Positions 954 through 62,294 of a stretch of DNA of 64,000 nucleotides are shown here, piece by piece (positions within the stretch are counted from its first letter, which is position 1; the number at the start of each line of letters is the position of its first letter). The translations under genes and the position numbers were made by a program. Origin of the DNA: Macrostomum lignano (taxonomy: Eukaryota); assembly GCA_002269645.1 (NCBI GenBank), contig NIVC01002335.1:62001-126000 (forward strand). The letters run 5' to 3'. The notes under the pieces were generated by a model. That model was not told where the DNA came from. It did not search any database and saw nothing but the letters and a program-made list of their open reading frames with translations.

Positions 954-1273
954 ACGAGCAAGGCCACATCAAACTAACCGACTTTGGCCTGAGCAAGGAG
1001 TCAATATTCGATGACGAGTCGAAGACTTACTCATTCTGCGGCACTGTTGAGTACATGGCCCCGGAGGTTGTCAACCGGAAGGGTCACGGTACCGCCAGCG
1101 ACTGGTGGAGCTACGGCGTGCTGATGTTCGAGATGCTGACCGGCCAGCTGCCCTTCCAGGGGGCCAATAGGAAAGATACAATGCAGCAGATTCTCAAGGC
1201 TAAGCTCGGGATGCCTCAGTTTTTGTCGCCGGACGCGCAAAGCCTGCTTAGGGCGTTGTTTAAGCGCAATCCG
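954..1273 (+). CDS. RPS6KA: RSK exon: N-terminal kinase subdomains VII-XI
   Basis: ctccag|AC GAG CAA GGC CAC ATC ([12 protein letters not shown]...LFKRNP)|gtaagt. Confidence 0.95.
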
Positions 1274-10200: not shown

Positions 10201-10651
10201 TGCATTAGCAATCAAAGTGTTGTTGATTGTTGCATTAGCAATCAAAGTGTTGTTGATTGTTGCATTAGCAATCAAAGTGTTGTTGATTGTTGCATTAGCA
10301 ATCAAAGTGTTGTTGATTGTTGCATTAGCAATCAAAGTGTTGTTGATTGTTGCATTAGCAATTTGCCAACCAATCCGGCAGGACTTGGTCCGCCGCATGC
10401 TGCTCGTGGATCCAACCCAGCGCATCACCGCTGCGCAGGCGCTGCAGCACACCTGGGTGGCCAGTCGGGCGGTGCTGCCGCTGTACCGGCTGGCGGTGCA
10501 CCAGGAGGCCGGCCAGATGCGCGGCGCCATGCGAGCAACATTCGCCGCGGTGAACAAGCCGCCGCCCTTGCCGGCCCTGCAGAGCGTGGCGGCATCGGGG
10601 CTGGCAAAGCGACGCGGCAAGCAGCTGCTGAAGGTGTCCACTGAGGTCTGA
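954..10651 (+). CDS. RPS6KA: p90 ribosomal S6 kinase (RSK), 5'-partial; join(954..1273,2150..2680,5369..5695,8715..8999,10382..10651)
   Basis: All junctions are GT-AG and in phase. N-terminal kinase motifs [12 protein letters not shown] and [13 protein letters not shown]; linker TPKDSP and LFRGFSYV hydrophobic motif; C-terminal kinase [29 protein letters not shown]; ERK-docking LAKRR; ends STEV*. Two kinase domains are diagnostic of the RSK family. Confidence 0.96.
1325..2132. repeat. 11-bp minisatellite (RSK intron)
   Basis: (gccaggcgtta)n with degenerate flanks. Confidence 0.95.
2150..2680 (+). CDS. RPS6KA: RSK exon: AGC C-tail, linker and start of C-terminal kinase
   Basis: ccgcag|ANRLG...FRGFSYV...GVGSFAIC...FAVK|gtaaag. 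Confidence 0.95.
2698..3500. repeat. 33-35-bp minisatellite (RSK intron)
   Basis: aggagaattccccttga...agt units. Confidence 0.95.
4662..5272. repeat. 20-bp then 41-bp minisatellites
   Basis: (gtagatttgtggtagctgga)n followed by (ggggcagatttggagtagatgggttaggtccacttcaagat)n. Confidence 0.93.
5369..5695 (+). CDS. RPS6KA: RSK exon: C-terminal kinase subdomains II-VIb
   Basis: ctgcag|[18 protein letters not shown]...HRDLKPSN...PESLR|gtgagt. Confidence 0.95.
5725..6390. repeat. ~20-bp minisatellite
   Basis: (tctgagtgggtatctgggtg)n. Confidence 0.93.
6920..8575. repeat. 35-bp minisatellite
   Basis: (ttgggatgtttaatcagctggggatttttgtctga)n. Confidence 0.96.
8715..8999 (+). CDS. RPS6KA: RSK exon: C-terminal kinase activation loop
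   Basis: ctgcag|[23 protein letters not shown]...SAHAK|gtgagc. Confidence 0.95.
9025..10362. repeat. 33/36-bp then 30-bp minisatellite
   Basis: ttgttgtttgttggttgttgaatagcaatccga units, switching to ttgttgcattagcaatcaaagtgttgttga. Confidence 0.95.
10382..10651 (+). CDS. RPS6KA: RSK terminal exon
   Basis: cggcag|[11 protein letters not shown]...[16 protein letters not shown] (TGA at 10649-10651). Confidence 0.95.
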   Translation, partial: DLVRRMLLVDPTQRITAAQALQHTWVASRAVLPLYRLAVHQEAGQMRGAMRATFAAVNKPPPLPALQSVAASGLAKRRGKQLLKVSTEV

Positions 10652-13461: not shown

Positions 13462-13809
13462 TCACGTGTTGCTGAAATTCACGTAGGCATTCTCCGAGCT
13501 CACCTTGTAGCTCTCGCTGGCGCCGCCGGTTCCGCTGGCGCCGCCTCCGCTGGCGCCGAAGAATCGCTCCCGGTAGCGGCTGGGCCGGTGCTCAATCAGC
13601 CAGGCGCCCAGGCGGCTTCCCGGATGTCGGAAGCCGTACAGCAGGACGCCGGCCACTGTGGCGACCGCAGCCAGCGCAAGGATGCCCAGGCAGACGCCGA
13701 GTGCCACCTGACCGGCGCTGCGCCTGCTGGCTGCCTCTGGCGGCTGCTTCGTGCCGGTGCGACCGAGCGGCACAATGCTGCGGTCGCCGTCACCGCAGGT
13801 TCCGCCGGC
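13462..13809 (-). CDS. PLXDC: PLXDC terminal exon: TM helix and cytoplasmic tail
   Basis: ccgcag|AGGTCGDG...[29 protein letters not shown]...IEHRPSRY...YVNFSNT*. Confidence 0.92.
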   Translation of the reverse strand, partial: AGGTCGDGDRSIVPLGRTGTKQPPEAASRRSAGQVALGVCLGILALAAVATVAGVLLYGFRHPGSRLGAWLIEHRPSRYRERFFGASGGGASGTGGASESYKVSSENAYVNFSNT

Positions 13810-16800
13810 CTGCGGTTCATGGTGTCAGTGATGAATTTATTTGTGTCAGTGATGAATTGATTTGTGTCAGTGATGAATTGATGTGTGTCAGTGATGAATT
13901 GATGTGTGTCAGTGATGAATTGATGTGTGTTGGTGACTCAGTGATGAATTGATTTGTGTCAGTGATGAATTGATGTGTGTTGGTGACTCAGTGATGAATT
14001 GATTTGTGTCAGTGATGAATTGATGTGTGTTGGTGACTCAGTGATGAATTGATTTGTGTCAGTGATGAATTGATGTGTGTTGGTGACTCAGTGATGAATT
14101 GATTTGTGTCAGTGATGAATTGATGTGTGTTGGTGACTCAGTGATGAATTGATTTGTGTCAGTGATGAATTGATGTGTGTTGGTGACTCAGTGATGAATT
14201 GATTTGTGTCAGTGATGAATTGATGTGTGTTGGTGACTCAGTGATGAATTGATTTGTGTCAGTGATGAATTGATGTGTGTTGGTGACTCAGTGATGAATT
14301 GATTTGTGTCAGTGATGAATTGATGTGTGTTGGTGACTCAGTGATGAATTGATTTGTGTCAGTGATGAATTGATGTGTGTTGGTGACTCAGTGATGAATT
14401 GATTTGTGTCAGTGATGAATTGATGTGTGTTGGTGACTCAGTGATGAATTTATTTGTGTCAGTGATGAATTGATTTGTGACAGTGATGAACTGATTTGTG
14501 TCAGCGATAGATAGATTGTGTCAGTGATAGATAGATAGTGTTAGCGATAGATAGATTGTGTCAGTGATAGATAGATTGTGTCAGTGATAGATAGATAGTG
14601 TCAGCGATAGATGGATTGTGTCAGCGATAGATAGATAGATTGTGTCAGCAATAGATAGATAGATTGTATCAGCGATAGATAGATTGTGTCAGTGATAGAT
14701 AGATAGATTGTGTCAGCGATAGATAGATTTTGTCAGCGATAGATAGATAGTGTCAGTGATAGATAGATTGTGTCAGTGATAGATAGATTGTGTCAGCGAT
14801 AGATAGATTGTGTCAGCGATAGATAGATAGATTGTGTCAGTGATAGATAGATTGTGTCAGCGATAGATAGATTGTGTCAGTGTTAGATAGATTGTGTCAG
14901 CGATAGATAGATTGTGTCAGCGATAGATAGATAGATTGTGTCAGTGATAGATAGATTGTGTCAGCGATAGATAGATTGTGTCAGCGATAGATAGATAGAT
15001 TGTGTCAGTGATAGATAGATAGTGTCAGCGATAGATTTTGTCAGCGATAGATAGATTGTGTCAGCGATAGATAGATTGTGTCAGTGATGAACTGATTTGT
15101 GTCAGCGATAGATAGATTGTGTCAGTGATAGATAGATAGTGTTAGCGATAGATAGATTGTGTCAGTGATAGATAGATTGTGTCAGTGATAGATAGATAGT
15201 GTCAGCGATAGATGGATTGTGTCAGCGATAGATAGATAGATTGTGTCAGCGATAGATAGATTGTGTCAGTGATAGATAGATAGATTGTGTCAGCGATAGA
15301 TAGATTGTGTCAGTGATAGATAGATTGTGTCAGTGATAGATAGATTGTGTCAGCGATAGATAGATAGATTGTGTCAGCGATAGATGGATTGTGTCAGTGA
15401 TGAACTGATTTGTGTCAGCGACAAATAGAATGTGTCAGCGATAGATAGATAGTGTCAGCGATAGATGGATTGTGTCAGCGATAGATAGATAGATTGTGTC
15501 AGCGATAGATAGATAGATTGTGTCAGCGATAGATAGATAGATTGTGTCAGCGATAGATAGATAGATAGTGTCAGCGATAGATGGATTGTGTCAGCGATAG
15601 ATAGATAGATTGTGTCAGCGATAGATAGATAGATTGTGTCAGCGATAGATAGATTGTGTCAGTGATAGATAGATAGTGTCAGCGATAGATAGATTGTGTC
15701 AGCGATAGATAGATTGTGTCAGCGATAGATAGATTGTGTCAGCGATAGATAGATGGATTGTGTCAGCGATAGATGGATTGTGTCAGCGATAGATAGATAG
15801 ATTGTGTCAGCGATAGATAGATAGATTGCGTCAGCGATAGATGGATTGTGTCAGACAGAAACAAATCACAAAAACAGCAGCCCAATATCAATATTAGCTT
15901 TGGCTAAAGTGGCATGCAGAGCTGACGGGCGGCAAGGCAAACACATTCCGGCTGGTGAGAAACTGATGGATTTAACAATCGAGCACTCTGTATGATTTGC
16001 AGTTGCAACAACTGCAAGGCAATAAAATGAAGGCTGTTAAGAAACGATAAAAAGTTGATAAAAATGCTACTTAAAAGTGAAAGCAGTTCTGTGAAAATGA
16101 AACGCTTAAATAAGTGAAAGAAAGTGAATTATTGATTTGTGTTTTATTGTTGCCGTACACAGTCGTGGTCCACGACGACCACATCGACAGTGGTGGCCTC
16201 CGTGGCCTGGGTGCTGCGTTCGCGAGTAGTAGTAGTAGCAGTAGTAGCAGCGGTAGTAGTAGTTTCAACCCTACGAGTTGTGATGTCCTTCCAGCAGAGC
16301 CTTGTGAACTGAGATTACACGCGTTTGTGTTGCCCAGTCAGAACTCTATTAGCTACTTATTACTGAGGAACTTCTCTGATGCTGGCGCGATAAAAAGTTT
16401 TGGTTTGCAATAGCAAATTCTACAGATTGTATCAATTGTAAGTTGGTCAGCTTGATTTACATGAGGTAGAAGGGAAAAGTTTTAAAAATTAGATATGGGA
16501 GTGGGATACGGGAAGTGAGATATGAGAATTGAGATACGGGAAGTGAGATATGGGAAGTGAGATACGGGAAGTGAGATATGGGAATTGAGATACGGGAAGT
16601 GAGATATGGGAAGTGAGATACGGGAAGTGAGATATGGGAATTGAGATACGGGAAGTGAGATATGGGAAGTGAGATACGGGAAGTGAGATATGGGAAGTGA
16701 GATATGAGAAGTGAGATACGGGAAGTGAGATATGGGAAGTGAGATACGGGAAGTGAGATACGGGAAGTGAGATATGGGAAGTGAGATACGGGAAGTGAGA

Positions 16801-19800
16801 TATGAGAAGTGAGATACGGGAAGTGAGATATGAGAAGTGAGATACGGGAAGTGAGATATGAGAAGTGAGATACGGGAAGTGAGATATGAGAAGTGAGATA
16901 CAGGAAGTGAGATATGAGAAGTGAGATACGGGAAGTGAGATACGGGAAGTGAGATATGAGAAGTGAGATATGGGAAGTGCGATACGGGAAGCGAGATATG
17001 AGAAGTGAGATACGGGAAGTGAGATACGGGAAGTGAGATATGAGAAGTGAGATATGGGAAGTGAGAGATGGGAAGTGAGATACGGGAAGTGAGATATGGG
17101 AAGTGCGATACGGGAAGCGAGATATGAGAAGTGAGAGATGGGAAGTGAGATACGGGAAGTGAGATATGGGAAGTGCGATACGGGAAGCGAGATACGGGAA
17201 GTGAGATTTGGGATGTGAGATACGGGAAGTGAGATATGAGAAGTGAGATATGGGAAGTGAGATATGGGAAGTGAGAGATGGGAAGTGCGATACGGGAAGC
17301 GAGATACGGGAAGTGAGATATGGGATGTGAGATACGGGAAGTGAGATATGAGAAGTGAGATACGGGAAGTGAGATATGAGAAGTGAGATATGGGAAGTGA
17401 GATACGGGAAGTGAGATACGGGAAGTGAGATATGGGAAGTGAGATACGGGAAGTGAGATATGGGAAGTGAGATATGGGAAGTGAGATATGGGAAGTGAGA
17501 TATTAGAAGTGAGAGATGGTAAGTTTAAAAAGCCAACAGAGCCACTATGTAAATTAAAACACTCACCAAAACTGTCAATCTTTTGACCCAAATAAAAACA
17601 ATAAACAGACTGCAAAACCAGCATAACCCAAACTCACCGAATAGTGGCACTCGGAGTCGTGCCAGTCCTGTAGCCGACGGTCGACCCCGGAGCTGCAGCG
17701 GCCCAGATCGTAGCACCAGCTGCAGTTGAAGGCGGGGACTCGCGACCGGTCAGTGCAGTTGGAGCAGCTGGTCTGCTGGTTGCAGGCTGGGAATTGTGGG
17801 AGTGGAGAAGCTATTTGTTATATGATTGCTTTCTTGGGATAAATTTGTGTACAGCTAACCACAGCTCAAATTTAGTCTCAATGTGATCTTAATGTCACCC
17901 CAATGTGATCTTAATGTCACCCCAATGTGATTTTAATGTCACCCCAATGTGATCTTAATGTCAGTCCCTATGTGATCTTAATGTCAGTCTGAATGTGATC
18001 TTAATGTCAGTCTCAATGTGATCTTAATGTCACCCCAATGTGATCTTAATGTCAGTCCCTATGTGATCTTAATGTCAGTCTGAATGTGATCTTAATGCCC
18101 GTCTCAATGTCATCTTAATGTCACCCTAATGTGATCTTAATGTCAGTCCCTATGTGATCTTAATTCCAGTCTCAATGTCATCTTAATGTCACCCCAATGT
18201 CATCTTAATGTCAGTCTGAATGTGATCTTAATGCCCGTCTCAATGTCATCTTAATGTCAGTCTGAATGTGATCTTAATGTCAGTCTAAATTTGATCTTAA
18301 TGTTAGTCTGAATGTGATCTTAATATCAGTCTGAATGTGATCTTAATGTCAGTCTGAATGTGATCTTAATGTTAGTCTGAATGTGATCTTAATGTTAGTC
18401 TGAATGTGATCTTAATGTCAGTCTGAATGTGATCTTAATGTTAGTCTGAATGTGATCTTAATGTCAGTCTGAATGTGATCTTAATGTTAGTCTGAATGTG
18501 ATCTTAATATCAGTCTGAATGTGATCTTAATGTTAGTCTGAATGTGATCTTAATGTCAGTCTGAATGTGATCTTAATGTCAGTCTGAATGTGATCTTAAT
18601 GTCAGTCTCAATGTGATCTTAATGTCACCCCAATGTGATCTTAATGTCAGTCCCTATGTGATCTTAATGTCAGTCTGAATGTGATCTTAATGTCAGTCTG
18701 AATGTGATCTTAATTTAGTCTTAACCCAAGATACCATTGAGTAAACCTAATTAAAGTCACCTCATCGTCACCTAGTCATGGTTACGAACTCGCACTAAAA
18801 TAACAACACAAGTGCAGCGCCACTTACTCGGCTGGTGCACCAGATGGATTATGCCGTCTGTGACAATTTGATCCCGTGGCACTCGCAGCTCGTGGTATCT
18901 CACAATCTTGCGCAACACGGTGCCTGAGGAAACAACTAATAAATTTAGAATGATGAATTATTTGACTGGTTAGTGCGTAAATTAGTGAAGGTTTATAGAT
19001 AGATTGACACGTACCTGGCAAACAAGATAATAAATTACAAGTCTAATAGATTAAAAGCAAAGTAGATAGTGGTGCAGTCAATCAGTTAGTTAAATAATGT
19101 TATTTATTACATGGTAAAGCGAAGGCTAAATTAAGTTAATTAGAATATACAGAGCAGTTATTAATTTTATATTATACACGCAGAGAAATAGCTTGTACAG
19201 GTTTCAGAAATAGTTTCTCAGCTCAAGACAGTAAGATAATAAGTTGATTAAGGTACAAGGAGCTAGTTTAAACAGGTAACACACCGAATAGCCTATCGAA
19301 CCTTCAGTAACAGGTTGTCTGAATACCCCAACAAACCTTCAGTAACAGGTTGTCTGAATACCATCAAACCTTCAGTAACAGGTTGTCTAAATACCATCAA
19401 ACCTTCAGTAACGAATAGAATTAATACCCCACCAAACCTTCAGTAAGGGTAGCCTGAATACCCCACCAAACCTTCAGTAGGGGTAGCCTGAATACCCCAT
19501 CAAACCTTCAGTAACAGGTTGTCTGAATACCCAATCAAACCTTCAGTAACAGGTTGTCTGAATACCCCATCAAACCTTCAGTAACAGGTTGTCTGAATAC
19601 CCCATCAAACCTTTAGTAACAAGTTGTCTGAATACCCCATCAAACCTTTAGTAACAGGTTGTCTGAATACCCCATCAAACCTTCAGTAACGAATAGAATG
19701 AATACCCCACCAAACCTTCAGTAAGGGTAGCCTGAATACCCATCAAACCTTCAGTAACGAATAGAATGAATACCCCACCAAACCTTCAGTAAGGGTAGCC

Positions 19801-46200: not shown

Positions 46201-46749
46201 CTCTTCTAGTCTTTTTCATGTCTCATATGTAAATTCTCTCATCTCTTCTCCTAAATGTATCTTTCCTATTTCAACTTTCCCATCTTATTTCTCATTTCTC
46301 TCTCATGCGCACATTGTTAGTCTCTATTCAATCTTTATTTTCCTAAAAAAATTGTTAGTTTCCAAATGATTCTAATCAATAAGCCGAAAACCATTGACTA
46401 GATCAAGTTTTCGGTGTGTATGAGCAATCCCTACTAAATAAAGATTAAAAACATGCAACTACATGTTAATTGAGCCATGTCAACAATGGACTGCTACAAG
46501 CGTACACACTTACTCAAAGTCGTTATTGACGAATTAATCAACTGAATGATAGCATTAAAAATATTTGATTGAGCTGGATTAGCTACTGCAAGTAGCATGG
46601 TAGGTTGCAAGGGGAACAAGGGCGAAATGTACGAGTATTTGTTAGTTTCAGCAGATTTTTATTGCTTATCTTGGCAGAAACGGCTATTAAGGCCATCAAA
46701 TAAGTATATCGGAACAATTAAGCTGAGATGAAGCTTGAAATTGAGTCTT

Positions 46750-49700
46750 GGCACCTCAGCAATTCCCTCTTGATCATTGGCACCTCAGCATTCCCCCCAT
46801 TGATCACTGGCACCTCAGCATTCCCCATTGATCATTGGCACCTCAGTATTCCCCCCATTGATCATTGGCACCTCAGCATTCCCCCATGTATTATTGGCAC
46901 CTCAGCATTCCCCCATTGATCATTGGCACCTCAGCATTCCCCCATTGATCATTGGCACCTCAGCATTCCCCTCATTGATCATTGGCACCTCAGCATTCCC
47001 CCATGTATCATTGGCACCTCAGCATTCCCCCATGTATCATTGGCACCTCAGCATTCCCCCATGTATCATTGGCACCTCAGCATTCCCCCATGTATCATTG
47101 GCACCTCAGCATTCCCCCCCATTGATCATTGGCACCTCTGAATTCCCCCATGTATCATTGGCACCTCAGCATTCCCCATTGATCATTGGCACCTCAGAAT
47201 TCCCTCTTGATCATTGGCACCTCAGCATTCCCTCTTGATCATTGGCACCTCAGCATTCCCCCATCCATGTATCATTGGCACCTCAGAATTCCCTCTTGAT
47301 CATTGGCACCTCAGCATTCCCCATTGATCACTGGCACCTCAGCATTCCCCATTGATCATTGGCACCTCAGTATTCCCTCTTGATCATTGGCACCTCAGCA
47401 TTCCCCATTGATAATTGGCACCTCAGCATTCCCCATTGATCATTGGCACCTCAGCATTCCCTCTTGATCATTGGCACCTCAGCATTCCCATTGATAATTG
47501 GCACCTCAGAATTCCCTCTTGATCATTGGCACCTCAGCATTCCCTCTTGATCATTGGCACCTCAGCATTCCCCCCATGTATCATTGGCACCTCAGCATTC
47601 CCCCATGTATCATTGGCACTTCAGCATTCCCCCATGTATCATTGGCACCTCAGCATTCCCCCCATTGATCATTAGCACCTCAGTATTCCCCCCATTGATC
47701 ATTGGCACCTCTGAATTCCCCCATGTATCATTGGCACCTCAGCATTCCCCATTGATCATTGGCACCTCAGCATTCCCCATGTATTATTGGCACCTCAGCA
47801 TTCCCCCCATGTATCATTGGCACCTCAGCATTCCCCCATGTATCATTGGCACCTCAGCATTCCCCCATGTGTCATTGGCACCTCAGCATTCCCCCCCCAT
47901 TGATCATTGGCACCTCAGTATTCCCCCCATTGATCATTGGCACCTCTGAATTCCCCCATGTATCATTGGCACCTCAGCATTCCCCATTGATCATTGGCAC
48001 CTCAGAATTCCCTCTTGATCATTGGCACCTCAGCATTCCCTCTTGATCATTGGCACCTCAGCATTCCCCCATCCATGTATCATTGGCACCTCAGAATTCC
48101 CTCTTGATCATTGGCACCTCAGCATTCCCCATTGATCACTGGCACCTCAGCATTCCCCATTGATCATTGGCACCTCAGTATTCCCTCTTGATCATTGGCA
48201 CCTCAGCATTCCCCATTGATAATTGGCACCTCAGAATTCCCTCTTGATCATTGGCACCTCAGCATTCCCTCTTGATCATTGGCACCTCAGCATTCCCCCC
48301 CATGTATTATTGGCACCTCAGCATTCCCCCATTGATCATTGGCACCTCAGCATTCCCCCATTGATCATTGGCACCTCAGCATTCCCCTCATTGATCATTG
48401 GCACCTCAGCATTCCCCCATGTATCATTGGCACCTCAGCATTCCCCCATGTATCATTGGCACCTCAGCATTCCCCATTGATCATTGGCACCTCAGCATTC
48501 CCCCATGTATTATTGGCACCTCAGCATTCCCCCCATGTATCATTGGCACCTCAGCATTCCCCCATTGATCATTGGCACCTCAGCATTCCCCCATGTATTA
48601 TTGGCACCTCAGCATTCCCCCCATGTATCATTGGCACCTCAGCATTCCCCCCATTGATCACTGGCACCTCAGAATTCCCTCTTGATCATTGGCACCTCAG
48701 CATTCCCCATTAATCACTGGCACCTCAGCATTCCCCCATGTATTATTGGCACCTCAGCATTCCCCCCATGTATCATTGGCACCTCAGCATTCCCCCATGT
48801 ATCATTGGCACCTCAGCATTCCCCCATGTGTCATTGGCACCTCAGCATTCCCCCCCCATTGATCATTGGCACCTCAGTATTCCCCCCATTGATCATTGGC
48901 ACCTCTGAATTCCCCATGTATCATTGGCACCTCAGCATTCCCCATTGATCATTGGCACCTCAGAATTCCCTCTTGATCATTGGCACCTCAGCATTCCCTC
49001 TTGATCATTGGCACCTCAGCATTCCCCATCCATGTATCATTGGCACCTCAGAATTCCCTCTTGATCATTGGCACCTCAGCATTCCCCATTGATCACTGGC
49101 ACCTCAGCATTCCCCATTGATCATTGGCACCTCAGTATTCCCTCTTGATCATTGGCACCTCAGCGTTCCCCATTGATAATTGGCACCTCAGAATTCCCTC
49201 TTGATCATTGGCACCTCAGCATTCCCTCTTGATCATTGGCACCTCAGCATTCCCCCATGTATCATTGGCACCTCAGCATTCCCCCCATGTATCATTGGCA
49301 CCTCAGCATTCCCCCATGTATCATTGGCACCTCAGCATTCCCCCCATTGATCATTGGCACCTCAGTATTCCCCCCATTGATCATTGGCACCTCTGAATTC
49401 CCCCATGTATCATTGGCACCTCAGCATTCCCCATTGATCATTGGCACCTCAGCATTCCCCCATGTATTATTGGCACCTCAGCATTCCCCCCATGTATCAT
49501 TGGCACCTCAGCATTCCCCCATTGATCATTGGCACCTCAGCATTCCCCCATGTATTATTGGCACCTCAGCATTCCCCCCATGTATCATTGGCACCTCAGC
49601 ATTCCCCCCATTGATCACTGGCACCTCAGAATTCCCTCTTGATCATTGGCACCTCAGCATTCCCCATTAATCACTGGCACCTCAGCATTCCCCATTGATC

Positions 49701-49940
49701 ACTGGCACCTCAGCATTCCCCATTGACCACTGGCACCTCAGCATTCCCCATTGATCATTGGCACCTCAGCATTCCCCATTGACCACTGGCACCTCAGCAT
49801 TCCCCATTGATCACTGGCACCTCAGCATTCCCATTGATCATTGGCACCTCAGCATTCCCCATTGATCACTGGCACCTCAGCATTCCCCATTGATCATTGG
49901 CACCTCAGCATTCCCCCATTGATCACTGGCACCTCAGTAT
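46750..49940. repeat. 28-30-bp minisatellite
   Basis: ttggcacctcagcattcccc(attga/atgta)tca units. Confidence 0.96.
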
Positions 49941-50574
49941 TTCTTCTTGAGTGCGTCTGAGAAGCCGAAGCAGTTATAGCTGTGTTATAATATCTAAACC
50001 AGCATGCAAAATCACGTGCAGTTTTGTAAGAAATTACGTGACTGAAAATGCATTCAAACATCAATTTCTGTAAGCAACACTATCGCAGACAAACTCGCCA
50101 CTCTAATGACATTTGTATGCGCAAGCAAAGAATGTTGATTGCTACGCTTCATTTAGCAAGAGTTGAGTAGAGATCACAGCGCAGCTAGATTGGTGTAAAA
50201 ATAGGCGTGCCATGGAGTGGCTTGCAGTAGCTTTCAAGCCAGACAATGGCTGTCTTCATAAACTAGTTGAGCAGGTCTCACTCAATGCAATCTAGCAGTG
50301 CGGCTCTAGTGGCTTGCGCCAGCCTCTCACTTCTATTAAGCCATCTATTTGGAAAGATGCTCTAAAAAGCTTCATGCTGTTGAGAGGGTCTGCCGAGTAG
50401 CAGACACGTGCGAACAAACCAGTGCAATAGTACCTTCCTACCAATTTTTGTTAGCAAAACGTGTGCCCAGTGGACGGTTAATGGAGTGCCATAAACTTAG
50501 ATATCTGGAGAGGGACAGTGGGACCCTTTTGCAGTGAGTTCTGTCACTAAGTCACTCACTCTGTCATCTCAGCA

Positions 50575-51970
50575 ACTCCCCATGAGCCTTGGCATCTCAG
50601 CAGTTGAGCCTTGGCATCTCAGCAGTTGAGCCTTGGCATCTCAGCAGTTGAGCCTTGGCATCTCAGCAGTTAAGCCTTGGCATCTCAGCAGTTGAGCCTT
50701 GGCATCTCAGCAGTTGAGCCTTGGCATCTCAGCAGTTGAGCCTTGGCATCTCAGCAGTTGAGCCTTGGCATCTCAGCAGTTAAGCCTTGGCATCTCAGCA
50801 GTTGAGCCTTGGCATCTCAGCAGTTGAGCCTTGGCATCTCAGCAGTTGAGCCTTGGCATCTCAGCAGTTGAGCCTTGGCATCTCAGCAGTTGAGCCTTGG
50901 CATCTCAGCAGTTGAGCCTTGGCATCTCAGCAGTTGAGCCTTGGCATCTCAGCAGTTGAGCCTTGGCATCTCAGCAGTTAAGCCTTGGCATCTCAGCAGT
51001 TGAGCCTTGGCATCTCAGCAGTTGAGCCTTGGCATCTCAGCAGTTAAGCCTTGGCATCTCAGCAGTTGAGCCTTGGCATCTCAGCAGTTGAGCCTTGGCA
51101 TCTCAGCAGTTGAGCCTTGGCATCTCAGCAGTTGAGCCTTGGCATCTCAGCAACTCCCCCATGAGCCTTGGCATCTCAGCAACTCCCCATGAGCCTTGGC
51201 ATCTCAGCAACTCCCCATGAGCCTTGGCATCTCAGCAACTCCCCTTGAGCCTTGGCATCTCAGCAACTCCCCTTGAGCCTTGGCATCTCAGCAGTTGAGC
51301 CTTGGCATCTCAGCAACTCCCCATGAGCCTTGGCATCTCAGCAACTCCCCATGAGCCTTGGCATCTCAGCAACTCCCCATGAGCCTTGGCATCTCAGCAA
51401 CTCCCCATGAGCCTTGGCATCTCAGCAACTCCCCATGAGCCTTGGCATCTCAGCAACTCCCCATGAGCCTTGGCATCTCAGCAACTCCCCATGAGTCTTG
51501 GCATCTCAGCAACTCCCCATGAGCCTTGGTATCTCAGCAACTCCCCATGAGCCTTGGCATCTCAGCAACTCCCCATGAGCCTTGGCATCTCAGCAACTCC
51601 CCATGAGCCTTGGCATCTCAGCAACTCCCCATGAGCCTTGGTATCTCAGCAACTCCTCATGAGCCTTGGTATCTCAGCAACTCCCCATGAGCCTTGGCAT
51701 CTCAGCAACTCCCCATGAGCCTTGGCATCTCAGCAACTCCCCATGAGCCTTGGTATCTCAGCAACTCCCCATGAGCCTTGGCATCTCAGCAAGTCCCCTT
51801 GAGCCTTGGTATCTCAGCAACTCCCTTTGAGCCTTGGTATCTCAGCAACTCCCCATGAGCCTTGGCATCTCAGCAACTCCCCATGAGCCTTGGCATCTCA
51901 GCAACTCCCCATGAGCCTTGGCATCTCAGCAACTCCCCATGAGCCTTGGCATCTCAGCAGTTGAGCCTTG
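50575..51970. repeat. 22-bp switching to 28-bp minisatellite
   Basis: gagccttggcatctcagcagtt then gagccttggcatctcagcaactccccat. Confidence 0.96.
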
Positions 51971-52103: not shown

Positions 52104-52110
52104 TATTTAT
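52104..52110 (+). promoter_or_regulatory. Possible TATA-like box for the secreted-peptide gene
   Basis: TATTTAT in a GC-rich context upstream of the ATG. Confidence 0.35.
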
Positions 52111-52198
52111 GCGGCCCCCTCTCGCGCTGCCCCGAGCCCCTCTTCAAGGTCCCAGCAATCAGCGCCTCTCAGTCGAAACCAGTTGCTCACTGCCCATC

Positions 52199-52423
52199 AT
52201 GAAGCTGCACCTTCTCCTCGCCATCGTGGCCGTTGCTGTGGCCGCAGTCGCCGTGACTGGCGAGCGACAATTCGACGAAGATGTCGAGCAGCCAGACGAC
52301 TTCGAATCGGCTCTGGACGACATCGCTGGCGACAGCCTCGAGGAGCCGCTGGAGAGCGACGAGGACGACATCAGCCAAGTTGCCAGACTCGGGCGCCGGC
52401 GCACCTTCAATAAAAAGAAGTAG
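52199..52423 (+). CDS. Small secreted precursor, 74 aa (candidate neuropeptide or antimicrobial-peptide precursor)
   Basis: atcATGaag start; signal peptide MKLHLLLAIVAVAVAAVAVTG; acidic spacer; C-terminus ARLGRRRTFNKKK*. GC-rich codon usage like the true exons; TATTTAT about 95 nt upstream. Confidence 0.8.
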   Translation: MKLHLLLAIVAVAVAAVAVTGERQFDEDVEQPDDFESALDDIAGDSLEEPLESDEDDISQVARLGRRRTFNKKK

Positions 52424-52844: not shown

Positions 52845-53600
52845 TCTCTTAGTGTCTGTCTTAGTGTCTGTCTTAGTGCCTGTCTTAGTGTCTGTCTTAG
52901 TGTCTGTCTTAGTGCCTGTCTTAGTGTCTGTCTGTCTTAGTGTCTGTCTTAGTGTCTGTCTTAGTGCCTGTCTTAGTGTCTGTCTGTCTTAGTGCCTGTC
53001 TGTCTTAGTGTCTGTCTGTCTTAGTGTCTGTCTTAGTGTCTGTCTTAGTGCCTGTCTTAGTGTCTGTCTGTCTTAGTGCCTGTCTGTCTTAGTGCCTGTC
53101 TTAGTGCCTGTCTTAGTGTCTGTCTTAGTGTCTGTCTGTCTTAGTGCCTGTCTGTCTTAGTGTCTGTCTGTCTTAGTGTCTGTCTTAGTGTCTGTCTTAG
53201 TGCCTGTCTTAGTGTCTGTCTGTCTTAGTGCCTGTCTGTCTTAGTGCCTGTCTTAGTGCCTGTCTTAGTGTCTGTCTTAGTGTCTGTCTGTCTTAGTGTC
53301 TGTCTTAGTGTCTGTCTTAGTGCCTGTCTTAGTGTCTGTCTGTCTTAGTGCCTGTCTGTCTTAGTGCCTGTCTGTCTTAGTGCCTGTCTGTCTTAGTGCC
53401 TGTCTTAGTGTCTGTCTGTCTTAGTGTCTGTCTGTCTTAGTGTCTGTCTTAGTGTCTGTCTTAGTGCCTGTCTTAGTGTCTGTCTGTCTTAGTGCCTGTC
53501 TGTCTTAGTGCCTGTCTGTCTTAGTGTCTGTCTGTCTTAGTGCCTGTCTGTCTTGGTGTCTGTCTCTCTTAGTGTCTCTCTGTTTGTCTGTCTGTCATTT
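52845..53600. repeat. 12/16-bp minisatellite
   Basis: tgtcttagtgyc(tgtc) units. Confidence 0.94.
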
Positions 53601-57313: not shown

Positions 57314-60175
57314 CTGCGGGTGGTGACCGTTTGTTATTTTGTTAAAACACTGACCAACTCGACAACAACAGCACAGAACACTGACCAACTCGACAACAAC
57401 AGCCCAGAACACTGACCAACTCGACAACAACAGCCCAGAACACTGAGCAACTCGACAACAACAGCTCAGAACACTGACCAACTCGACAACAACAGCACAG
57501 AACACTGACCAACTCGATAACAATATCTCAGAACACTGACCAACTTGATAACAATATCTCAGAACACTGACCAACTCGATAACAAAAACAACTCGAACAC
57601 TGACAAACTCGACAACAGCTGCCCAGAACACTGACCAACTTGGCAACAACAGCTCAGAACACTGACCGACTCGACAACAACAGCTCAGAACTCTGACAAA
57701 CTCGATAACACGAGTTAAGAAAACGGATTAAATAAGTAAGCAGACTTCAAAGCAAACTCACAAGAATAAGCTGCATGCGGATGCTGCAACTGCCGTGACG
57801 GCTGTTTACTGCCGGTGAAATATCCCTGAGGTGGCAGCGGCGTTGGCGGCGGCGGCGGCAGCGGATTCGGGCAGTGCTGGCTCAGCATCGAGGCGAACCG
57901 GCCAACGGGTCGGCCAGTTGAGTCGCGCTCGAATGAATTCTCCAGCGGTCCGCAGGCGGGTATTTCGAAGCCACCAGGCCCCGATCGCAGACAACCGTTC
58001 GGTAGTGCGTTGGGGTTGAACTGGCGATTTTCTAGTCGCGTTATCAACCGCTCGTCCTCGGCCCCAAACTCGCCGCCCATGAGAGTGGGCTCACCGACTA
58101 TCATCACGTCCTTGTGCAGGAGGAGGGGGTTGCTCTATGCTAATAATAGTAATGTTTGTAGGAAGGCTGTTCACGGTCCAGCTCACTTGGATCACTTGGT
58201 CCAGCCCGTTTCAAAGGTAACGAGCTCGCTGACTCCCTCGCTAAGACGGGTACCCAGATTAATGACTGGGCGGATACCCTGCACCTGCGCACATGGGATG
58301 GCATTTCCGACTGCCGCCAATCCCGAGCGGCAGTGCCCAACCCGTCCCTCAAGCTGTGGAGAATCCTTTTGAACCAAAATCGAAAAGATATCCGCGATCT
58401 CACTATGACCTTCACAGGTCACGGTTGCTTTGCCAGGCACTGTTTCCTCCGAGGCGTCCCCCGGAGTGAACTTTGCCTCCCTTTGCAACCTCGAGAACGA
58501 AGACGCCAAGCACTTTGTCTGCTACTGCCCGGCCTTCAACCGAGACCGGCTCAACCACCTCGGGCCCAACCGGTCCCTGGATGACGTTTGCTGGCCAGAG
58601 AACATCCCACGGCTCATCCGGTTCCTCCGGGCTACCAAACGAGTCTCCGTCTTCCCCACCGAAGACAAGGCTGCAGACAGGACCGGCAGACCTCCCTGAC
58701 CGGCCCCGCGCCCTAGCTTTTGCGGGCTCTTTAGGGATTAGCGGAATGGGCGACGCTCGCCTCCCCGCTGCGTCTTCGGACCGCCCTGCAGCTAAGTCAG
58801 GAAGGCTGTTGGCACCCTGGAGCAACTTTTCCAGCAACATCGTCTCACAACCAGCGCTGACGGCAATTCTACACATTCCGCTGACCCCTGAGCACATACA
58901 AGAGCGCCAATGCTCCGCGTCAGTAGTATGGTTATACTACTGAGTAGAGGTGGCTTAGTAGCCATCAAATCATTTTATGGGAATATTTCAGAAGGACATT
59001 AAAGAAGCAAAAGATTACTGTACGCTCATTCCGTTGACTTCAGTGCACGAAACATGATGAGTACACACAGCCTCACAGTGGGCACTGTGTATTATTCTTA
59101 ATTACGTTCTTATCTTATTACATTCTCATCTTGTCACGTCGGGCTTGTGCACGAAAATTGACCGAAGGGCTGTACGGCGATTCACATCCGTCAGGGCCAA
59201 CCCCCAAGGCTCAGAGAGTGTACGTGCCTGACGATTGGAGAGTCAGGGGCCGCTGTGCACCCGCTGTGTGAGCGCGTGTGTATTGTCACAGCATTGCATT
59301 GCACAGCAAGCCCCAGGCCTGCGAACTCGGGACCTCAGATTCAAGAATTTGATCTGATCCAACTGCCCCTCTGTCTTTTCTGTCTTTGAGGAATTGCGTC
59401 TCTTTTTTATTTGAATTTGCGTCACACGGCAGTAGCTGACGTTTCTCTTTCTAGTTAATTGTCCTGCCGATTTCCCCGACAGCGGTTGGACCCTGATGGA
59501 ATTTTTTCGCGATCGCCAAAGCAAATCCGGATTGCCAGTCTGGCCAAAGTCGCGACAAAGGCGGGGCCCTCACCGGTGGCTAATGAAGGGCCGGGGGAGT
59601 CGCTTCCTCTTCTTCCCCGACAATTATCGTGAGCAATTTTCTATAGGGGAGAAAATCTCTAGAAACGTCTTCCCTGCTGCTCCAAAGAGTCCGAATCTCG
59701 AGAGAGGGGGGATGAGAGACGATTCGGTTAATGGAAAACTTCGATATGGAATTTCTGACAAAGACTGGGAGTGAACGGGCGGCCACTAATTTCATTAGTG
59801 ACCGGGTCGAATCGAGCTCGGGATCCTCCCAGACGGTGTCTCTACGTCTACGTCTTGGCTGGGGGTGAGCGGAAGGGATAAAAGATGGAGTCTCGGTGGG
59901 GGGGGAGACGGAAAATATGGGAGATTCAACAGCATCGCTGTTGACGGGACTGGCTTGCCCCGATGAAGGTTTGGGGGTAGAAAATACACATGTGCGGATG
60001 AAGCGAAGAGGCTGAGTCACTGCTCAATGCCCCCAGGCATCACAGGCTGCGCCTGTTCAGTCGCTGATTTCCCTGGCAGTATTCTCACCTTCTGGCGCTA
60101 TATCTGCGCGTCTTCTCTCTCTCGTCCAAGTGGTTTCATTCGATACCGATAAATTCCTTGACTCACCCCTTGCAA

Positions 60176-60226
<51 letters not shown>

Positions 60227-62294
60227 CTGCTTCTGTGCTGCGCCAGACGCTGCCCCTGTCGTCTTCTTCTTGCCCTTCTTGGCACGACCGACACTGGTAG
60301 CTGGCGTCGAGTCAGTTTCCGGGGCGTTGCCATGGATACCATTGTTATTGTTGTTGTTGTTGCCACTGTTGCTGCTATTCGTCTTTCTTTTGCGGCGTTT
60401 GCTTTGAGTTCGACTCGATTCTAAAATTTGAGAATTTGATGCGGAAATTAAGTTTTTACAAAAGAAATTTGATGCAGGTAGATTTGCAGGCAGGTCACAT
60501 TCCTATCTTGTCACATTCCCATCTTGTTACATTCCCAACCAGTCACATTCCCATCTTATTACTCATTAAATTCCCAATCAGTCGTATTCTCATCTTGTCA
60601 CATTCCTATCTTGTTACATTTCCATCTCATTACGTTTTTATCTCATTAAATTCCCAATCAGTCCCATTCTCATCTTGTCACATTCTCATCTTGTCACATT
60701 CCTATCTTGTCATATTTCCATCTTATTACGTTTTTATCTTATTAAATTCCCAATCAGTCCCATTCTCATCTTGTCACATTCCCATCTTGTCACGGCGACA
60801 CACCGGGAGGCGCCACCATGCGCTGCCACTTCTGAAACAGAGTTGTCTTCAAGCAGTCCCTGGGGTGCAGGCCGTAGGCCTTCTGCCGGCTCATCAGCTC
60901 CTGCATTGGCTCGAGGATGATGCAGAGGCGAAGAAAGTGCAGCGTGTGGTTCGTGATGCCCTGGCGAGTGATGTTGTGCGACATCTGATCCAGCACCTGG
61001 GGATCCTGGAGGATACGGTGGTGATTGGCTATCCGCTTTAACATTTCCCTCTCCCTCCGCCGCTTTGCCCCGCCCGCCCAACCTGATGAGAGCCGACCGC
61101 CTGTCTGGGCACCATCTCTCGGCAGCTGCGGATCTGGAAGAGCCAGCTCTTGATCCGCATCATGTCGTCGAAGGTGAACTCCAGCACCAGCCGGCCCTCG
61201 GTTACCACGTTGGTGAGCATCGGCCGGACGTGGGTCGCGTGCATCTCGCCTCGGTCGCAGTCCAGAGTCAAGCTGGTGTTGTGAAACGATTCCCGGGCGT
61301 TCTTTAGGAATATGTACATGTCGGCCACTCCTCCGTCAAAGATGCTGCGAAAGTACCGCGGGATCAGGGTGCGACCGATGGCTGCAATGGCGGCGAGATG
61401 TGAGGGGGTGTTCGGGCCGGTGCTTAATTAGTCGGCAACACTAAAGGCTCATTAATAAATTCACTAATGTTGGTAAAAACTTATCAGAGGACGAGACTTG
61501 ATGAACAAGGCTGAGGTCGGCAAGATCAAAGATATCAATACCATCAAACTGAGTGAACAGGGCAGAGGTCGGCAAGATCAAAGGTGGCATCAAACTGAGT
61601 GAACAGGGCTGAGGTCGGCAAGATCAAAGGTGGCATCAAACTGAGTGAACAGGGCTGAGGTCGGCAAGATCAAAGGTGGCATCAAACTGAGTGAACAGGG
61701 CTGAGGTCGGCAAGATCAAAGGTGGCATCAAACTGAGTGAACAGGGCTGAGGTCGGCAAGATCAAAGGTTAACACAAAAGCTTCAACACACAGGGTGGGC
61801 AGCGGAAAGTTAAAAAAAACAGTACTTGAGCTGTTAGATATCTTGTATCTTCCACTCACAATAGCGCTTCGGCCCGTCCTCCATCAGCAGCTGGATGGTG
61901 AGCACCGAGTCGTCCTCGAAAAACTCGGTGGCAAACTGGTCCCACCAGAAGTTCTGGCCGTCGCTTTCGCACTGTTATAAAAGTTAATTTTATAAATATT
62001 TGTCTATCGATGAAGACATTATATGCCAGAACAGTTTCCCCCACTGACCTCTGGCCGCTGCTGCAGTCGCTTGTTCATCTCATGGATCCGAACGTCTGGA
62101 GTTCCCATCAGGCAGTGCTGCTGCGGGGGCGGCGGCGGCGGCAGAGGTGTCCTAAAAAATGGTGGGTCTTGATAAAATGCCTGCTGCTGCGGTGGCGGCG
62201 GAGGTGGCGGTGGCGGCGGCCCGAGCATCGACATCATAGGTCCAGCCAACGGCGACATTCCCGACGGAGTTGGAGGCGGCGGCGGCGGCAGCAT
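57129..62294 (-). CDS. LDB: LIM domain-binding protein (LDB1/LDB2/Chip family), 548 aa; complement(join(57129..57313,57762..58110,60167..60420,60804..61005,61083..61381,61860..61971,62049..62294))
   Basis: Dimerisation domain (RIHEMNKRLQ, WWDQFATEFFEDD, IGRTLIPRYFRSIF), LCCD (LCIILEPMQELMSR, RDCLKTTLFQKWQRMVAPP), NLS KRRKRK, LIM-interaction domain DVMIVGEPTLMGGEFGAEDERLITRLEN. All junctions are GT-AG and in phase; an in-frame TAA lies upstream of the ATG. Confidence 0.95.
57345..57710. repeat. 31-bp minisatellite filling the last LDB intron
   Basis: aacactgaccaactcgacaacaacagcycag. Confidence 0.93.
57762..58110 (-). CDS. LDB: LDB exon 6 (LIM-interaction domain)
   Basis: cacaag|DVMIVGEPTLMGGEFG...HAAYS|gtgagt. 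Confidence 0.92.
58170..58699 (+). mobile_element. Decayed 5'-truncated non-LTR retrotransposon (end of RNase H plus CCHC zinc knuckle), antisense in an LDB intron
   Basis: VQLTWI...KGNELADSLAKTG (RNase H C-terminus), then TGHGCFARH...C-(frameshift)-LCNLENEDAKHFVCYCPAF...R. This is typical of ORF2 ends in I/R1/LOA/Tad1-type LINEs. Two frameshifts. Confidence 0.8.
59193..59272. repeat. Dispersed ~80-bp hairpin-forming repeat, copy 2
   Basis: 3 mismatches to copy 1 over the first ~55 nt. Confidence 0.85.
60167..60420 (-). CDS. LDB: LDB exon 5 (NLS, poly-N, poly-Q)
   Basis: ttttag|ESSRTQSKRRKRK...Q16LQG|gtgagt. Confidence 0.92.
60490..60790. repeat. 16-bp-based degenerate repeat in an LDB intron
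   Basis: cattcycatcttgtca units. Confidence 0.85.
60804..61005 (-). CDS. LDB: LDB exon 4
   Basis: ctccag|DPQVLDQMSHNITR...KWQRMVAPP|gtgtgt. Confidence 0.95.
61083..61381 (-). CDS. LDB: LDB exon 3
   Basis: ttgcag|IGRTLIPRYF...FDDMMRIKSW...GSHQ|gttggg. Confidence 0.95.
61510..61770. repeat. 46-bp tandem repeat, ~5.5 copies
   Basis: caagatcaaaggtggcatcaaactgagtgaacagggctgaggtcgg. Confidence 0.93.
61860..61971 (-). CDS. LDB: LDB exon 2
   Basis: taacag|CESDGQNFWWDQFATEFFEDD...GPKRY|gtgagt. Confidence 0.95.
62049..62294 (-). CDS. LDB: LDB coding exon 1 (Pro-rich N-terminus)
   Basis: MLPPPP...DVRIHEMNKRLQQRPE|gtcagt. Confidence 0.9.

What the first reader, a model, noticed from the sequence alone, without database searches (positions are those of the whole stretch)
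52199..52423. Orphan intronless secreted precursor with an acidic spacer and an RL-G-RRR amidation signal
Seen: a 21-aa signal peptide, a 40-aa stretch with 18 D/E residues (ERQFDEDVEQ...ESDEDDISQV), then ARL-G-RRR-TFNKKK*. It is a coding-like GC-rich island between two satellites with a TATTTAT upstream. Known: Gly followed by basic residues is the PC1/2-CPE-PAM amidation signal, and an acidic pro-piece followed by a cationic tail is typical of antimicrobial-peptide precursors. Inference: either a new ...VARL-amide neuropeptide/hormone (possibly pyroGlu-blocked if cut at ER|Q) or a small cationic defence or seminal peptide. I recognise no family.
Basis: partly seen in the sequence, partly recalled or inferred. 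Interest (0 to 1): 0.72.

Follow-up and report, generated by a model that had tools for sequence, protein, structure and literature searches.

The report
Small secreted acidic protein gene family
The open reading frame is a real, already annotated but uncharacterised gene of the flatworm Macrostomum lignano, one of a small family of secreted acidic mini-proteins; the glycine that suggested a new amidated hormone is not conserved even in the nearest copy.

Summary
Window 52199-52423 (+) is a 74-codon intronless ORF: a hydrophobic N-terminus, 18 D/E in 40 residues, then ARLGRRRTFNKKK. It sits in a 61% GC island between two minisatellites, with TATTTAT 95 nt upstream.

The window is Macrostomum lignano Mlig_3_7 contig NIVC01002335.1. 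GenBank already has transcript-derived "hypothetical protein" models of this ORF (BOX15_Mlig003877g1 type), so "orphan" is only partly right. An exhaustive HMMER search found a second subfamily in the same genome (Mlig009355, Mlig030190, Mlig029420, Mlig015496). These are 72-73 aa, 40% identical, also intronless, and partly in tandem pairs.

Between subfamilies the acidic core is constrained: LDDIAGxSLxEPLExD is invariant, with pN 0.26 against saturated pS 0.80. RRR and the terminal KK are also invariant. The residues before RRR are free: LG, VA, W-R, G-Q, WG-R. The 97% identical copy on NIVC01001908.1 reads VARVARRR, with no Gly.

The amidated-neuropeptide reading is therefore not supported. 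My best reading is a lineage-restricted secreted pre-pro-protein, cut at RRR by a convertase, whose conserved acidic peptide is the functional part. Tissue and function remain unknown, and interest is modest.

The parts
52104..52110 (+). TATA-like box TATTTAT, 95 nt upstream of the ATG and about 30 nt upstream of the annotated 5' end
   Evidence: Position. The GenBank model on this contig (P0002) starts 60 nt before the ATG, at window 52139. The upstream in-frame ATG at 52109 overlaps the box and lies outside the model.
52139..52198 (+). 5' untranslated leader. GenBank translates it as part of a 'partial' CDS because the frame is open. Kozak context is cccAtcATGa.
   Evidence: P0002 is 94 aa: 20 leader codons plus the 74-aa ORF. 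Bases 52157-52182 match -75..-49 of the group B paralogs at 21 of 26 positions, only marginally above shuffles.
52199..52261 (+). Signal-peptide-like N-terminus, residues 1-21: n-region MK, 17-residue hydrophobic run, small residues at -3/-1 (V-T-G|E or A-V-A|V)
   Evidence: The paralogs keep MK, a 12-residue hydrophobic run and the polar stretch SQLAAS despite pN 0.57 in this region, which is the behaviour of a signal peptide. SignalP was not available.
52262..52378 (+). Conserved acidic core, residues 22-60. It includes the invariant Q24, D26, VE.PD and LDDIAGxSLxEPLExD.
   Evidence: Invariant columns. Core pS 0.80 against pN 0.26 between subfamilies. Net charge of the part before RRR is -16. 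AlphaFold pLDDT is 56-60 and the model is mostly coil.
52379..52393 (+). V-A-R (conserved as VA[RK]) followed by the two free positions L64-G65, the supposed amidation site
   Evidence: 52388 C>G and 52392 G>C turn LG into VA in the copy on NIVC01001908.1. Paralogs have W-R, G-Q and WG-R here.
52394..52402 (+). Invariant RRR, a probable proprotein-convertase cleavage site
   Evidence: R66-R68 are invariant across both subfamilies while their codons differ (CGC CGG CGC against CGC CGC CGA). Cleavage itself is inferred, not shown.
52403..52423 (+). C-terminal TFNKKK plus the TAG stop. The terminal KK is invariant and the three residues after RRR vary (TFN, LSY, YSY, YSS). AATAAA lies at 52409-52414.
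50583..51959 (.). Upstream flanking minisatellites (22-bp and 28-bp units). They are context, not part of the gene.
   Evidence: The same arrays flank the copies L001 and L003.
52847..53583 (.). Downstream flanking minisatellite (12/16-bp units). It is context, not part of the gene.

Best explanation
This is a transcribed, intronless, TATA-driven gene of Macrostomum lignano. It encodes a 74-residue pre-pro-protein of a lineage-restricted family with two subfamilies and at least eight gene copies in the assembly.

Proposed mechanism:
- The N-terminal hydrophobic segment directs the protein into the secretory pathway and is removed near G21 (inferred from sequence features).
- What remains is a disordered polypeptide of about 53 residues: a very acidic segment of about 44 residues (net -16) joined to a short basic tail (net +6).
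- The invariant RRR is the likely target of a furin/PC-type convertase. Carboxypeptidase trimming would then release the acidic peptide (inferred).
- The acidic peptide, with its conserved LDDIAGxSLxEPLE core, is the part under selection and so the likely functional product.
- The basic tail probably serves as a charge-neutralising or sorting pro-piece.
- C-terminal amidation would happen only in copies that happen to carry a Gly before RRR. It is not a conserved property of the family.

The producing cell type (gland or neuron) and the target are unknown.
For: - Identity of the window: it matches NIVC01002335.1 of GCA_002269645.1 exactly.
- Gene models: GenBank models PAA62701.1 and P0002 cover the ORF. 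The Mlig_3_7 annotation was built from RNA-seq transcriptional units plus TransDecoder (PMC5730564), so a model implies a transcript.
- Family: exhaustive phmmer over 1.84 billion representatives gives P0006 as the only true distant relative. BLASTP gives 40% identity, E 3e-15, over the full length.
- Paralog loci: all are intronless and 219-222 bp, with a TATA-like TTTTAAAAG upstream. Tandem pairs lie 5.4 kb apart.
- Constraint between subfamilies: core pS 0.80 against pN 0.26.
- Constraint within subfamilies: outside the last 14 codons there are 4 synonymous events and amino-acid changes in only 2 adjacent codons. Seven of 9 amino-acid-changing events fall in the last 14 codons (binomial p 2e-4).
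- RRR and KK are invariant.
- The mature part is predicted disordered.
Against: - No expression, localisation or peptide data could be retrieved. Gene-identifier searches in the full text and in the supplements of eight M. lignano papers were empty.
- Signal-peptide cleavage and convertase cleavage are inferred from motifs only.
- The group A hydrophobic run is 17 residues long, which is long for a signal peptide.
- The counts of recent substitutions are small.
- A conserved acidic pro-region is also what conserved-propiece, variable-mature-peptide systems show, so conservation alone does not prove that the acidic part is the active product.
Confidence: 0.45

Rival explanations
1. The protein is secreted and acts intact, without cleavage at RRR. 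It would be a small dipolar, disordered protein with a polyanionic body and a polycationic end. It could work as a charge-based component of a gland secretion, for example by binding cationic or anionic polymers or calcium. The invariant Ser46 in an acidic S-x-E context could be phosphorylated, and group B has a Tyr in the sulfation-like context DDDYDEE.
For: - Both charge blocks are conserved.
- The protein is disordered and has no cysteines.
- S46 is invariant within G[DE]SL[ED]E.
- M. lignano is predicted to secrete an unidentified small negatively charged factor that detaches the cationic glue protein Mlig-ap1 (PMC6410801).
Against: - Three or four consecutive Arg residues in a secretory protein are a strong convertase substrate.
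- Nothing links this gene to any gland.
- The releasing-gland vesicles were reported as protein-poor and polysaccharide-positive.
Confidence: 0.2
2. It is a defence-peptide precursor of the Hydra arminin or amphibian type. The conserved signal and acidic pro-piece would neutralise a cationic C-terminal peptide of the VA[RK]xxRRRxxxKK kind, which would be the active and fast-changing product.
For: - The architecture is signal, anionic pro-region, cationic C-terminus.
- Recent amino-acid changes cluster in the last 14 codons, and the tandem pair L004a/L004b differs by 4 nonsynonymous and 0 synonymous changes, all in the tail.
- The family is lineage-restricted with tandem duplicates.
Against: - The cationic part is only 9-13 residues, and no conserved basic site upstream would release it.
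- Its basic residues are invariant and only 4-5 positions vary.
- Tail dN/dS is about 1, which fits relaxed constraint rather than clear positive selection (my estimate).
- An internal RRR would be cut by convertases and would destroy such a peptide.
Confidence: 0.15
3. This is the first reader's reading: a neuropeptide or hormone precursor that yields a C-terminally amidated peptide (...QVARL-NH2) through Gly plus basic-residue processing.
For: - The window copy has L-G-RRR.
- P0009 has W-G-RRRR, and group B proteins end in G-KK, so some family members could be amidated.
- The size of 72-74 aa fits small flatworm prohormones (general knowledge).
Against: - The Gly is replaced by Ala in the 97% identical copy and is absent in most paralogs.
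- Group A lacks the terminal G-KK.
- No basic site delimits the N-terminus of a short peptide, so the product would be an acidic peptide of about 43 residues.
- The conserved stretch is the 'spacer'.
- The ER|Q site is not conserved.
Confidence: 0.1
4. It is not a functional protein-coding gene: a chance ORF in a GC-rich transcribed island.
For: - Other frames and the opposite strand of the island also carry ORFs of 63-93 codons.
- The nearest copy shows 2 synonymous and 2 nonsynonymous changes, which is uninformative on its own.
Against: - A 40% identical paralog subfamily keeps the same frame, length, start context and architecture.
- Synonymous sites are saturated while the residues are conserved.
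- All eight copies examined are intact.
Confidence: 0.03

Closest known systems
GenBank hypothetical proteins of Macrostomum lignano: BOX15_Mlig003877g1 (PAA62701.1) and paralogs BOX15_Mlig009355g2, Mlig030190g2, Mlig029420g1, Mlig015496g1/g2 (PAA48652.1, PAA52186.1, PAA85832.1, PAA85831.1, PAA88167.1, PAA78582.1)
   Same: P0002 is the model of this very ORF. The others are the homeolog or allele (97% identical) and the second subfamily (40-45% identical, same architecture).
   Different: None has a name, domain or published function. The group A models are 5'-'partial' because the leader was translated.
Hydra arminins and amphibian skin antimicrobial-peptide precursors (signal peptide, anionic pro-region, cationic C-terminal peptide). 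Recalled from general knowledge, not tested by sequence.
   Same: The order of parts is signal, acidic region, basic C-terminus. Both are taxonomically restricted, occur as tandem paralogs, and have a conserved pro-region with a variable C-terminal end.
   Different: - There is no sequence similarity to any protein outside M. lignano in the searches run.
- The basic part here is 9-13 residues, against about 20-30.
- No processing site lies between the acidic region and the tail other than the RRR inside the tail.
Amidated neuropeptide prohormones of flatworms (npp/spp genes; Gly plus dibasic processing by PC2, carboxypeptidase E and PAM). General knowledge.
   Same: Small size, a signal peptide, a polybasic site, and a Gly before the basic run in some copies.
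   Different: - The Gly is not conserved.
- No N-terminal cleavage site exists for a short peptide.
- The conserved part is the acidic region.
- There are no repeated peptide copies.
Granin-type acidic secretory proteins and acidic spacer peptides. General knowledge.
   Same: Acidic, disordered, secretory, with polybasic convertase sites.
   Different: Granins are several hundred residues long with many sites. No homology was detected.

Membership tests
Amidated neuropeptide precursor | Gly immediately before a basic cleavage site, conserved among homologs | tested here: not met
   LG-RRR occurs in the window only. The other versions are VA-RRR (L001), W-RRRR, GQ-RRR and WG-RRRR.
Amidated neuropeptide precursor | The mature peptide is more conserved than the spacer regions | tested here: not met
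   The invariant block is LDDIAGxSLxEPLExD in the acidic 'spacer'. Positions next to RRR are the most variable.
Amidated neuropeptide precursor | Basic site at the N-terminal side of the peptide | tested here: not met
   There is no K or R between R23 and R63 in group A. R23 is not conserved, since group B has SNQ.
Amidated neuropeptide precursor | Expression in neurons or endocrine cells, and detection of the peptide | not testable with these tools
   No expression or peptidomic data were retrievable.
Secreted protein (classical signal peptide) | N-terminal n-, h- and c-regions with small residues at -3/-1, conserved in kind among homologs | tested here: met
   This was a manual check only. 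Both subfamilies have MK; the hydrophobic runs are 17 and 12 residues; the c-regions are VTG|E and LAAS|N. SignalP was not available.
Proprotein-convertase substrate | Conserved multibasic motif in a secretory protein | tested here: met
   RRR is invariant across subfamilies with differing codons. Actual cleavage was not tested.
Anionic-propiece / cationic-peptide defence precursors (arminin-like) | Signal peptide, anionic pro-region and cationic C-terminal region | tested here: met
   Charge is -16 before RRR and +6 after it.
Anionic-propiece / cationic-peptide defence precursors (arminin-like) | A releasable cationic peptide long enough to act (about 20 residues or more), and antimicrobial activity | tested here: inconclusive
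   The tail is only 9-13 residues, and no conserved cleavage site precedes it. Activity is not testable here.
Any Pfam or PDB family | Significant profile match | tested here: not met
   Pfam gives only DUF7289 at 15.9 bits, below its cut-off of 27, over the hydrophobic N-terminus. Group B gives nothing, and PDB gives nothing.

The most novel reading that the evidence does not exclude
The conserved polyanionic peptide of about 40 residues released from this family is the long-sought 'small negatively charged' releasing factor of the Macrostomum duo-gland adhesive organ. It would be stored neutralised by its polybasic tail, freed by convertase cleavage, and would detach the worm by competing with the cationic glue protein Mlig-ap1. 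A broader version is that this is a new class of charge-switch secretory peptides.
Probability: 0.04. Interest if true: 0.75.

Novelty: new member of a known kind. Interest (0 to 1): 0.3.

Why it matters
If the family is a gland or neuroendocrine product, it adds one more taxonomically restricted secreted peptide family to a transgenic flatworm model. Its conserved polyanionic core would be a defined candidate for charge-based functions such as adhesive release, granule packing or defence. For the scan, the main value is a caution. A Gly plus basic motif in a single sequence is not an amidation signal until homologs are checked. Here a copy from the same genome already contradicts it.

Tried and rejected
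- Paralogs within the window: tblastn found none, only low-complexity noise.
- Exact look-ups of the 74-aa and 104-aa ORFs: not on record. The record holds the 94-aa 'partial' model.
- Other hits of the exhaustive search: P0003, P0004 and P0005 are long repetitive proteins that match through composition or repeats, and I do not count them as homologs. I read only the sequence of P0003. P0004 and P0005 were judged from the hit table: 4825 and 1367 aa, with 13 and 10 short stretches.
- Profile search with both subfamilies: it found nothing beyond M. lignano.
- Pfam, PDB, Rfam and tRNA scans: nothing relevant.
- Structure prediction: low confidence and mostly coil, so I ran no fold search.
- Literature: gene identifiers and peptide strings do not occur in the searchable full text. 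They also do not occur in the held supplements of PMC5730564, PMC5816591, PMC7336406, PMC5946080, PMC12896417, PMC5977470 and PMC12732829. PMC10786194 has no held supplements.
- Transposon or satellite-derived ORF: rejected. The island is unique in the window and the family has ordinary single-copy flanks.
- CpG hypermutability as the cause of tail variation: rejected. The changes are mostly transversions.
- Shared 3' motif CAGTTTTTTATTT between subfamilies: not above shuffles.

Full report
**1. What is in the sequence**

Window 52199-52423 (+) translates without interruption to MKLHLLLAIVAVAVAAVAVTGERQFDEDVEQPDDFESALDDIAGDSLEEPLESDEDDISQVARLGRRRTFNKKK*. Residues 22-61 contain 18 D/E in 40 positions.

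The ORF lies in an 887-bp unique island between two minisatellite blocks, 50583-51959 and 52847-53583. CDS GC is 0.61, against 0.49 upstream and 0.39 downstream. TATTTAT sits at 52104-52110 and AATAAA sits inside the last codons at 52409-52414. The start context is cccAtcATGa.

ORF length by itself proves nothing, because the GC-rich island also holds ORFs of 63-93 codons in other frames and on the other strand.

**2. Where the window comes from, and whether the ORF is already known**

A protein search returned one cluster: [quoted passage not shown]. The cluster has two 94-aa members.
- P0001 (PAA62701.1) lies on NIVC01001908.1 (locus L001).
- P0002 lies on NIVC01002335.1 (L002) and NIVC01000598.1 (L003).

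The window is identical to L002 at a constant offset of 42138, so it is part of contig NIVC01002335.1 of assembly Mlig_3_7.

The 94-aa models are the 74-aa ORF plus 20 translated leader codons. They start at window 52139, about 30 nt downstream of the TATA-like box, which is a sensible promoter geometry.

The Mlig_3_7 gene set was made from RNA-seq transcriptional units cut by trans-splicing and poly(A) evidence, followed by TransDecoder (PMC5730564). A gene model therefore implies a transcript. This is an inference from the method; I could not inspect any reads.

**3. Surroundings**

About 52% of the window is tandem repeat, in more than 35 different arrays. The GC-rich, high-GC3 islands between arrays at 1-10.7 kb are exons of an RSK-type S6 kinase on the + strand, so the arrays fill its introns.

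On the - strand there are PSI-domain and transmembrane exons at 13.4-17.8 kb, and a LIM-domain-binding (Ldb) gene at 57.7-62.3 kb. The small gene is a separate unit about 5 kb from the 3' end of Ldb, in convergent orientation. It has no paralog in the window.

**4. The family**

An exhaustive phmmer search of 1.84 billion representative proteins returned five proteins at E <= 0.001: the gene's own cluster (P0001), three long proteins, and P0006. I attribute the three long matches to composition or repeats. P0006 is 72 aa, from M. lignano, and BLASTP gives 40% identity over the full length with E 3e-15.

Its 90% cluster holds four variants, annotated BOX15_Mlig009355g2/Mlig030190g2, Mlig029420g1, Mlig015496g1 and Mlig015496g2. 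A profile built from both subfamilies found nothing else in 5.8 billion clusters. Pfam and PDB give no significant match.

The group B genes are also intronless (219-222 bp) and have a TATA-like TTTTAAAAG upstream. At one locus they occur as a tandem pair 5.4 kb apart, seen on two contigs (L004 and L005). Single copies occur on L006, L007 and L008. All eight copies examined are intact.

**5. What is conserved and what is not**

The alignment has these invariant positions: M1, K2, Q24, D26, V29, E30, P32, D33, the block L39-D-D-I-A-G44, S46, L47, E49-P-L-E52, D54, V61, A62, R66-R-R68 and the terminal K-K.

The residues just before RRR differ in nearly every variant:

| Variant | Residues before the basic run |
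|---|---|
| Window, L003 | L-G |
| L001 | V-A |
| Group B | W-(R) |
| Group B | G-Q |
| Group B | W-G-(R) |

The three residues after the basic run also vary: TFN, LSY, YSY, YSS. Group B ends in G-K-K and group A ends in N-K-K-K.

Nei-Gojobori counts between subfamilies:

| Region | pS | pN |
|---|---|---|
| Acidic core | 0.80 (saturated) | 0.26 |
| Tail | 0.63 | 0.40 |
| Signal region | 0.41 | 0.57 (hydrophobic character kept) |

Among closely related copies I count 9 amino-acid-changing events, and 7 of them fall in the last 14 codons (binomial p 2e-4). The 6 synonymous events are spread evenly.
- The window and L001 differ in the CDS at four bases. Two are synonymous (52234, 52339). The other two are the transversions 52388 C>G and 52392 G>C, which turn L-G into V-A.
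- The tandem pair L004a/L004b is identical from -268 to +257 except for four nonsynonymous bases, all in the tail.
- My rough estimate is dN/dS of about 0.2 outside the tail and about 1 at the non-basic tail positions.

In short, the acidic core, RRR and KK are constrained. The pre-RRR position that carries the Gly in the window is essentially free.

**6.

The RRR and the basic tail are conserved. The Gly is not, even in a 97% identical copy from the same genome.

The proposed ER|Q monobasic cut, which would give a pyroGlu end, has no counterpart in group B (SNQ). No basic residue delimits a short peptide, so any amidated product would be an acidic peptide of about 43 residues. The most conserved stretch is the presumed spacer.

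This is the opposite of the pattern in neuropeptide precursors. The secreted-precursor part of the reading stands, and the amidated-neuropeptide part does not.

The defence-peptide alternative (anionic pro-piece, cationic tail) fits the order of parts and the concentration of recent changes in the tail. However, the tail is only 9-13 residues, it lacks a release site, it contains a convertase site itself, and its variable positions look relaxed rather than clearly positively selected.

**7. Most likely mechanism**

Shown:
- A gene model exists for the ORF.
- The ORF is intact in two divergent subfamilies.
- The acidic core and the basic residues are under purifying selection.
- The mature part is predicted disordered (pLDDT 56-60; short helices at 35-42 and 58-63).
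- The protein has no cysteines.

Inferred:
- It enters the secretory pathway through an N-terminal signal peptide. Both subfamilies have MK, a hydrophobic run and small -3/-1 residues. The group B run of 12 residues is too short for a membrane anchor.
- A furin/PC-type convertase cuts at the invariant RRR, and carboxypeptidase trims the basic residues.
- This releases an acidic peptide of about 40-44 residues (net -13 to -16), which is the conserved and presumably active part.
- The basic tail (net +5 to +6) acts as a neutralising or sorting pro-piece.
- Amidation would occur only in copies that happen to carry a Gly.

My confidence in this overall reading is about 0.45. The rivals are an uncleaved dipolar secretion protein (0.2), an arminin-like defence precursor (0.15), an amidated neuropeptide (0.1) and no functional gene (0.03).

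**8. Comparison with known things**

The gene and its paralogs are already in GenBank and UniProt as unnamed hypothetical proteins. No paper in the searchable library mentions their identifiers or sequences.

By architecture, the closest analogues are the anionic-propiece, cationic-peptide precursors such as Hydra arminins and amphibian skin peptides, and acidic secretory peptides of the granin type. These are resemblances recalled from general knowledge, and no sequence relationship to them was detected.

The family fails three defining features of amidated neuropeptide precursors that could be tested here.

**9. A speculative link**

Wunderer et al. 2019 (PMC6410801) infer that M. lignano detaches by secreting an unidentified "small negatively charged molecule" that competes with the cationic glue protein Mlig-ap1. 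A secreted polyanionic peptide family is a conceivable candidate.

Nothing ties these genes to the tail glands, and the releasing vesicles were described as protein-poor. I give this link about 4%.

**10. Verdict**

This is a real gene from a real small family. It is lineage-restricted as far as the databases reach, and its function is unknown. The eye-catching amidation signal is a feature of one copy, not of the family. Interest is modest (0.3). I classify it as a new member of a known kind: a small secreted pre-pro-protein with a multibasic site.

Noticed in passing
window 1-64000: About 52% of the window is tandem repeat, in more than 35 different minisatellite arrays with 9-139 bp units. 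The genome-wide figure reported for simple and tandem repeats is 15% (PMC5730564). Unique islands of 0.4-1.5 kb alternate with the arrays.
   Followed up: partly
window 1055-10651 (+): Exons of an RSK-type (two-kinase-domain) S6 kinase lie at about 1055-1297, 2180-2690, 5498-5720, 8766-9008 and 10397-10651. Each intron is filled by its own minisatellite array. The protein ends in ...KVSTEV.
   Followed up: partly
window 46740-51959: Three adjacent arrays (28-bp, 22-bp and 28-bp units) share the core TTGGCAyCTCAGCA. This suggests the arrays diversify in place from one another. The same arrays flank the homeologous copy L001, with different copy numbers.
   Followed up: no
window 13465-13824 (-) and 17578-17817 (-): High-GC3 exons on the minus strand encode a PSI (plexin repeat) domain, and a transmembrane segment with a short cytoplasmic tail. 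They look like a PTTG1IP-like small membrane protein gene.
   Followed up: partly
window 57715-62294 (-): Exons of a LIM-domain-binding protein (Ldb/CLIM) gene: the LID domain at 57715-58104, LIM_bind at 60790-61319, and a proline-rich N-terminal exon at 62019-62294. The gene is convergent with the small gene.
   Followed up: partly
window 52157-52182; L004 9926-9951: A 26-nt stretch of the 5' leader (AATCAGCGCCTCTCAGTCGAAACCAG) matches -75..-49 of the group B paralogs at 21 of 26 positions. The score is only just above 200 shuffles. It could be a remnant of a common leader or a shared regulatory element.
   Followed up: partly
L004 10001-10219 and 15370-15588; L005 9464-9682 and 14837-15055: The group B tandem pair shares a unit of about 700 bp (promoter plus CDS). 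The unit is identical from -268 to +257 except for four nonsynonymous bases in three tail codons (W>G, R>Q, L>Y). The second copy on L005 did not appear in the list of called genes.
   Followed up: yes
group B proteins P0006-P0009; window residue S46 (52334-52336): Group B has a Tyr in DDDYDEE, a typical tyrosine-sulfation context, and ends in G-K-K. The invariant Ser46 lies in G[DE]SL[ED]E, a context for an acidophilic secretory-pathway kinase. Both are motif-level observations only.
   Followed up: no
L001, L002, L003: The assembly holds three copies of the locus. L003 is nearly identical to the window: a one-base length difference at 52115 and one further single-base indel at the upstream edge of the aligned island. 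L001 is about 1.5% diverged. This is consistent with the redundancy and hidden polyploidy reported for the DV1 line. I could not decide whether L001 is an allele or a homeolog.
   Followed up: partly
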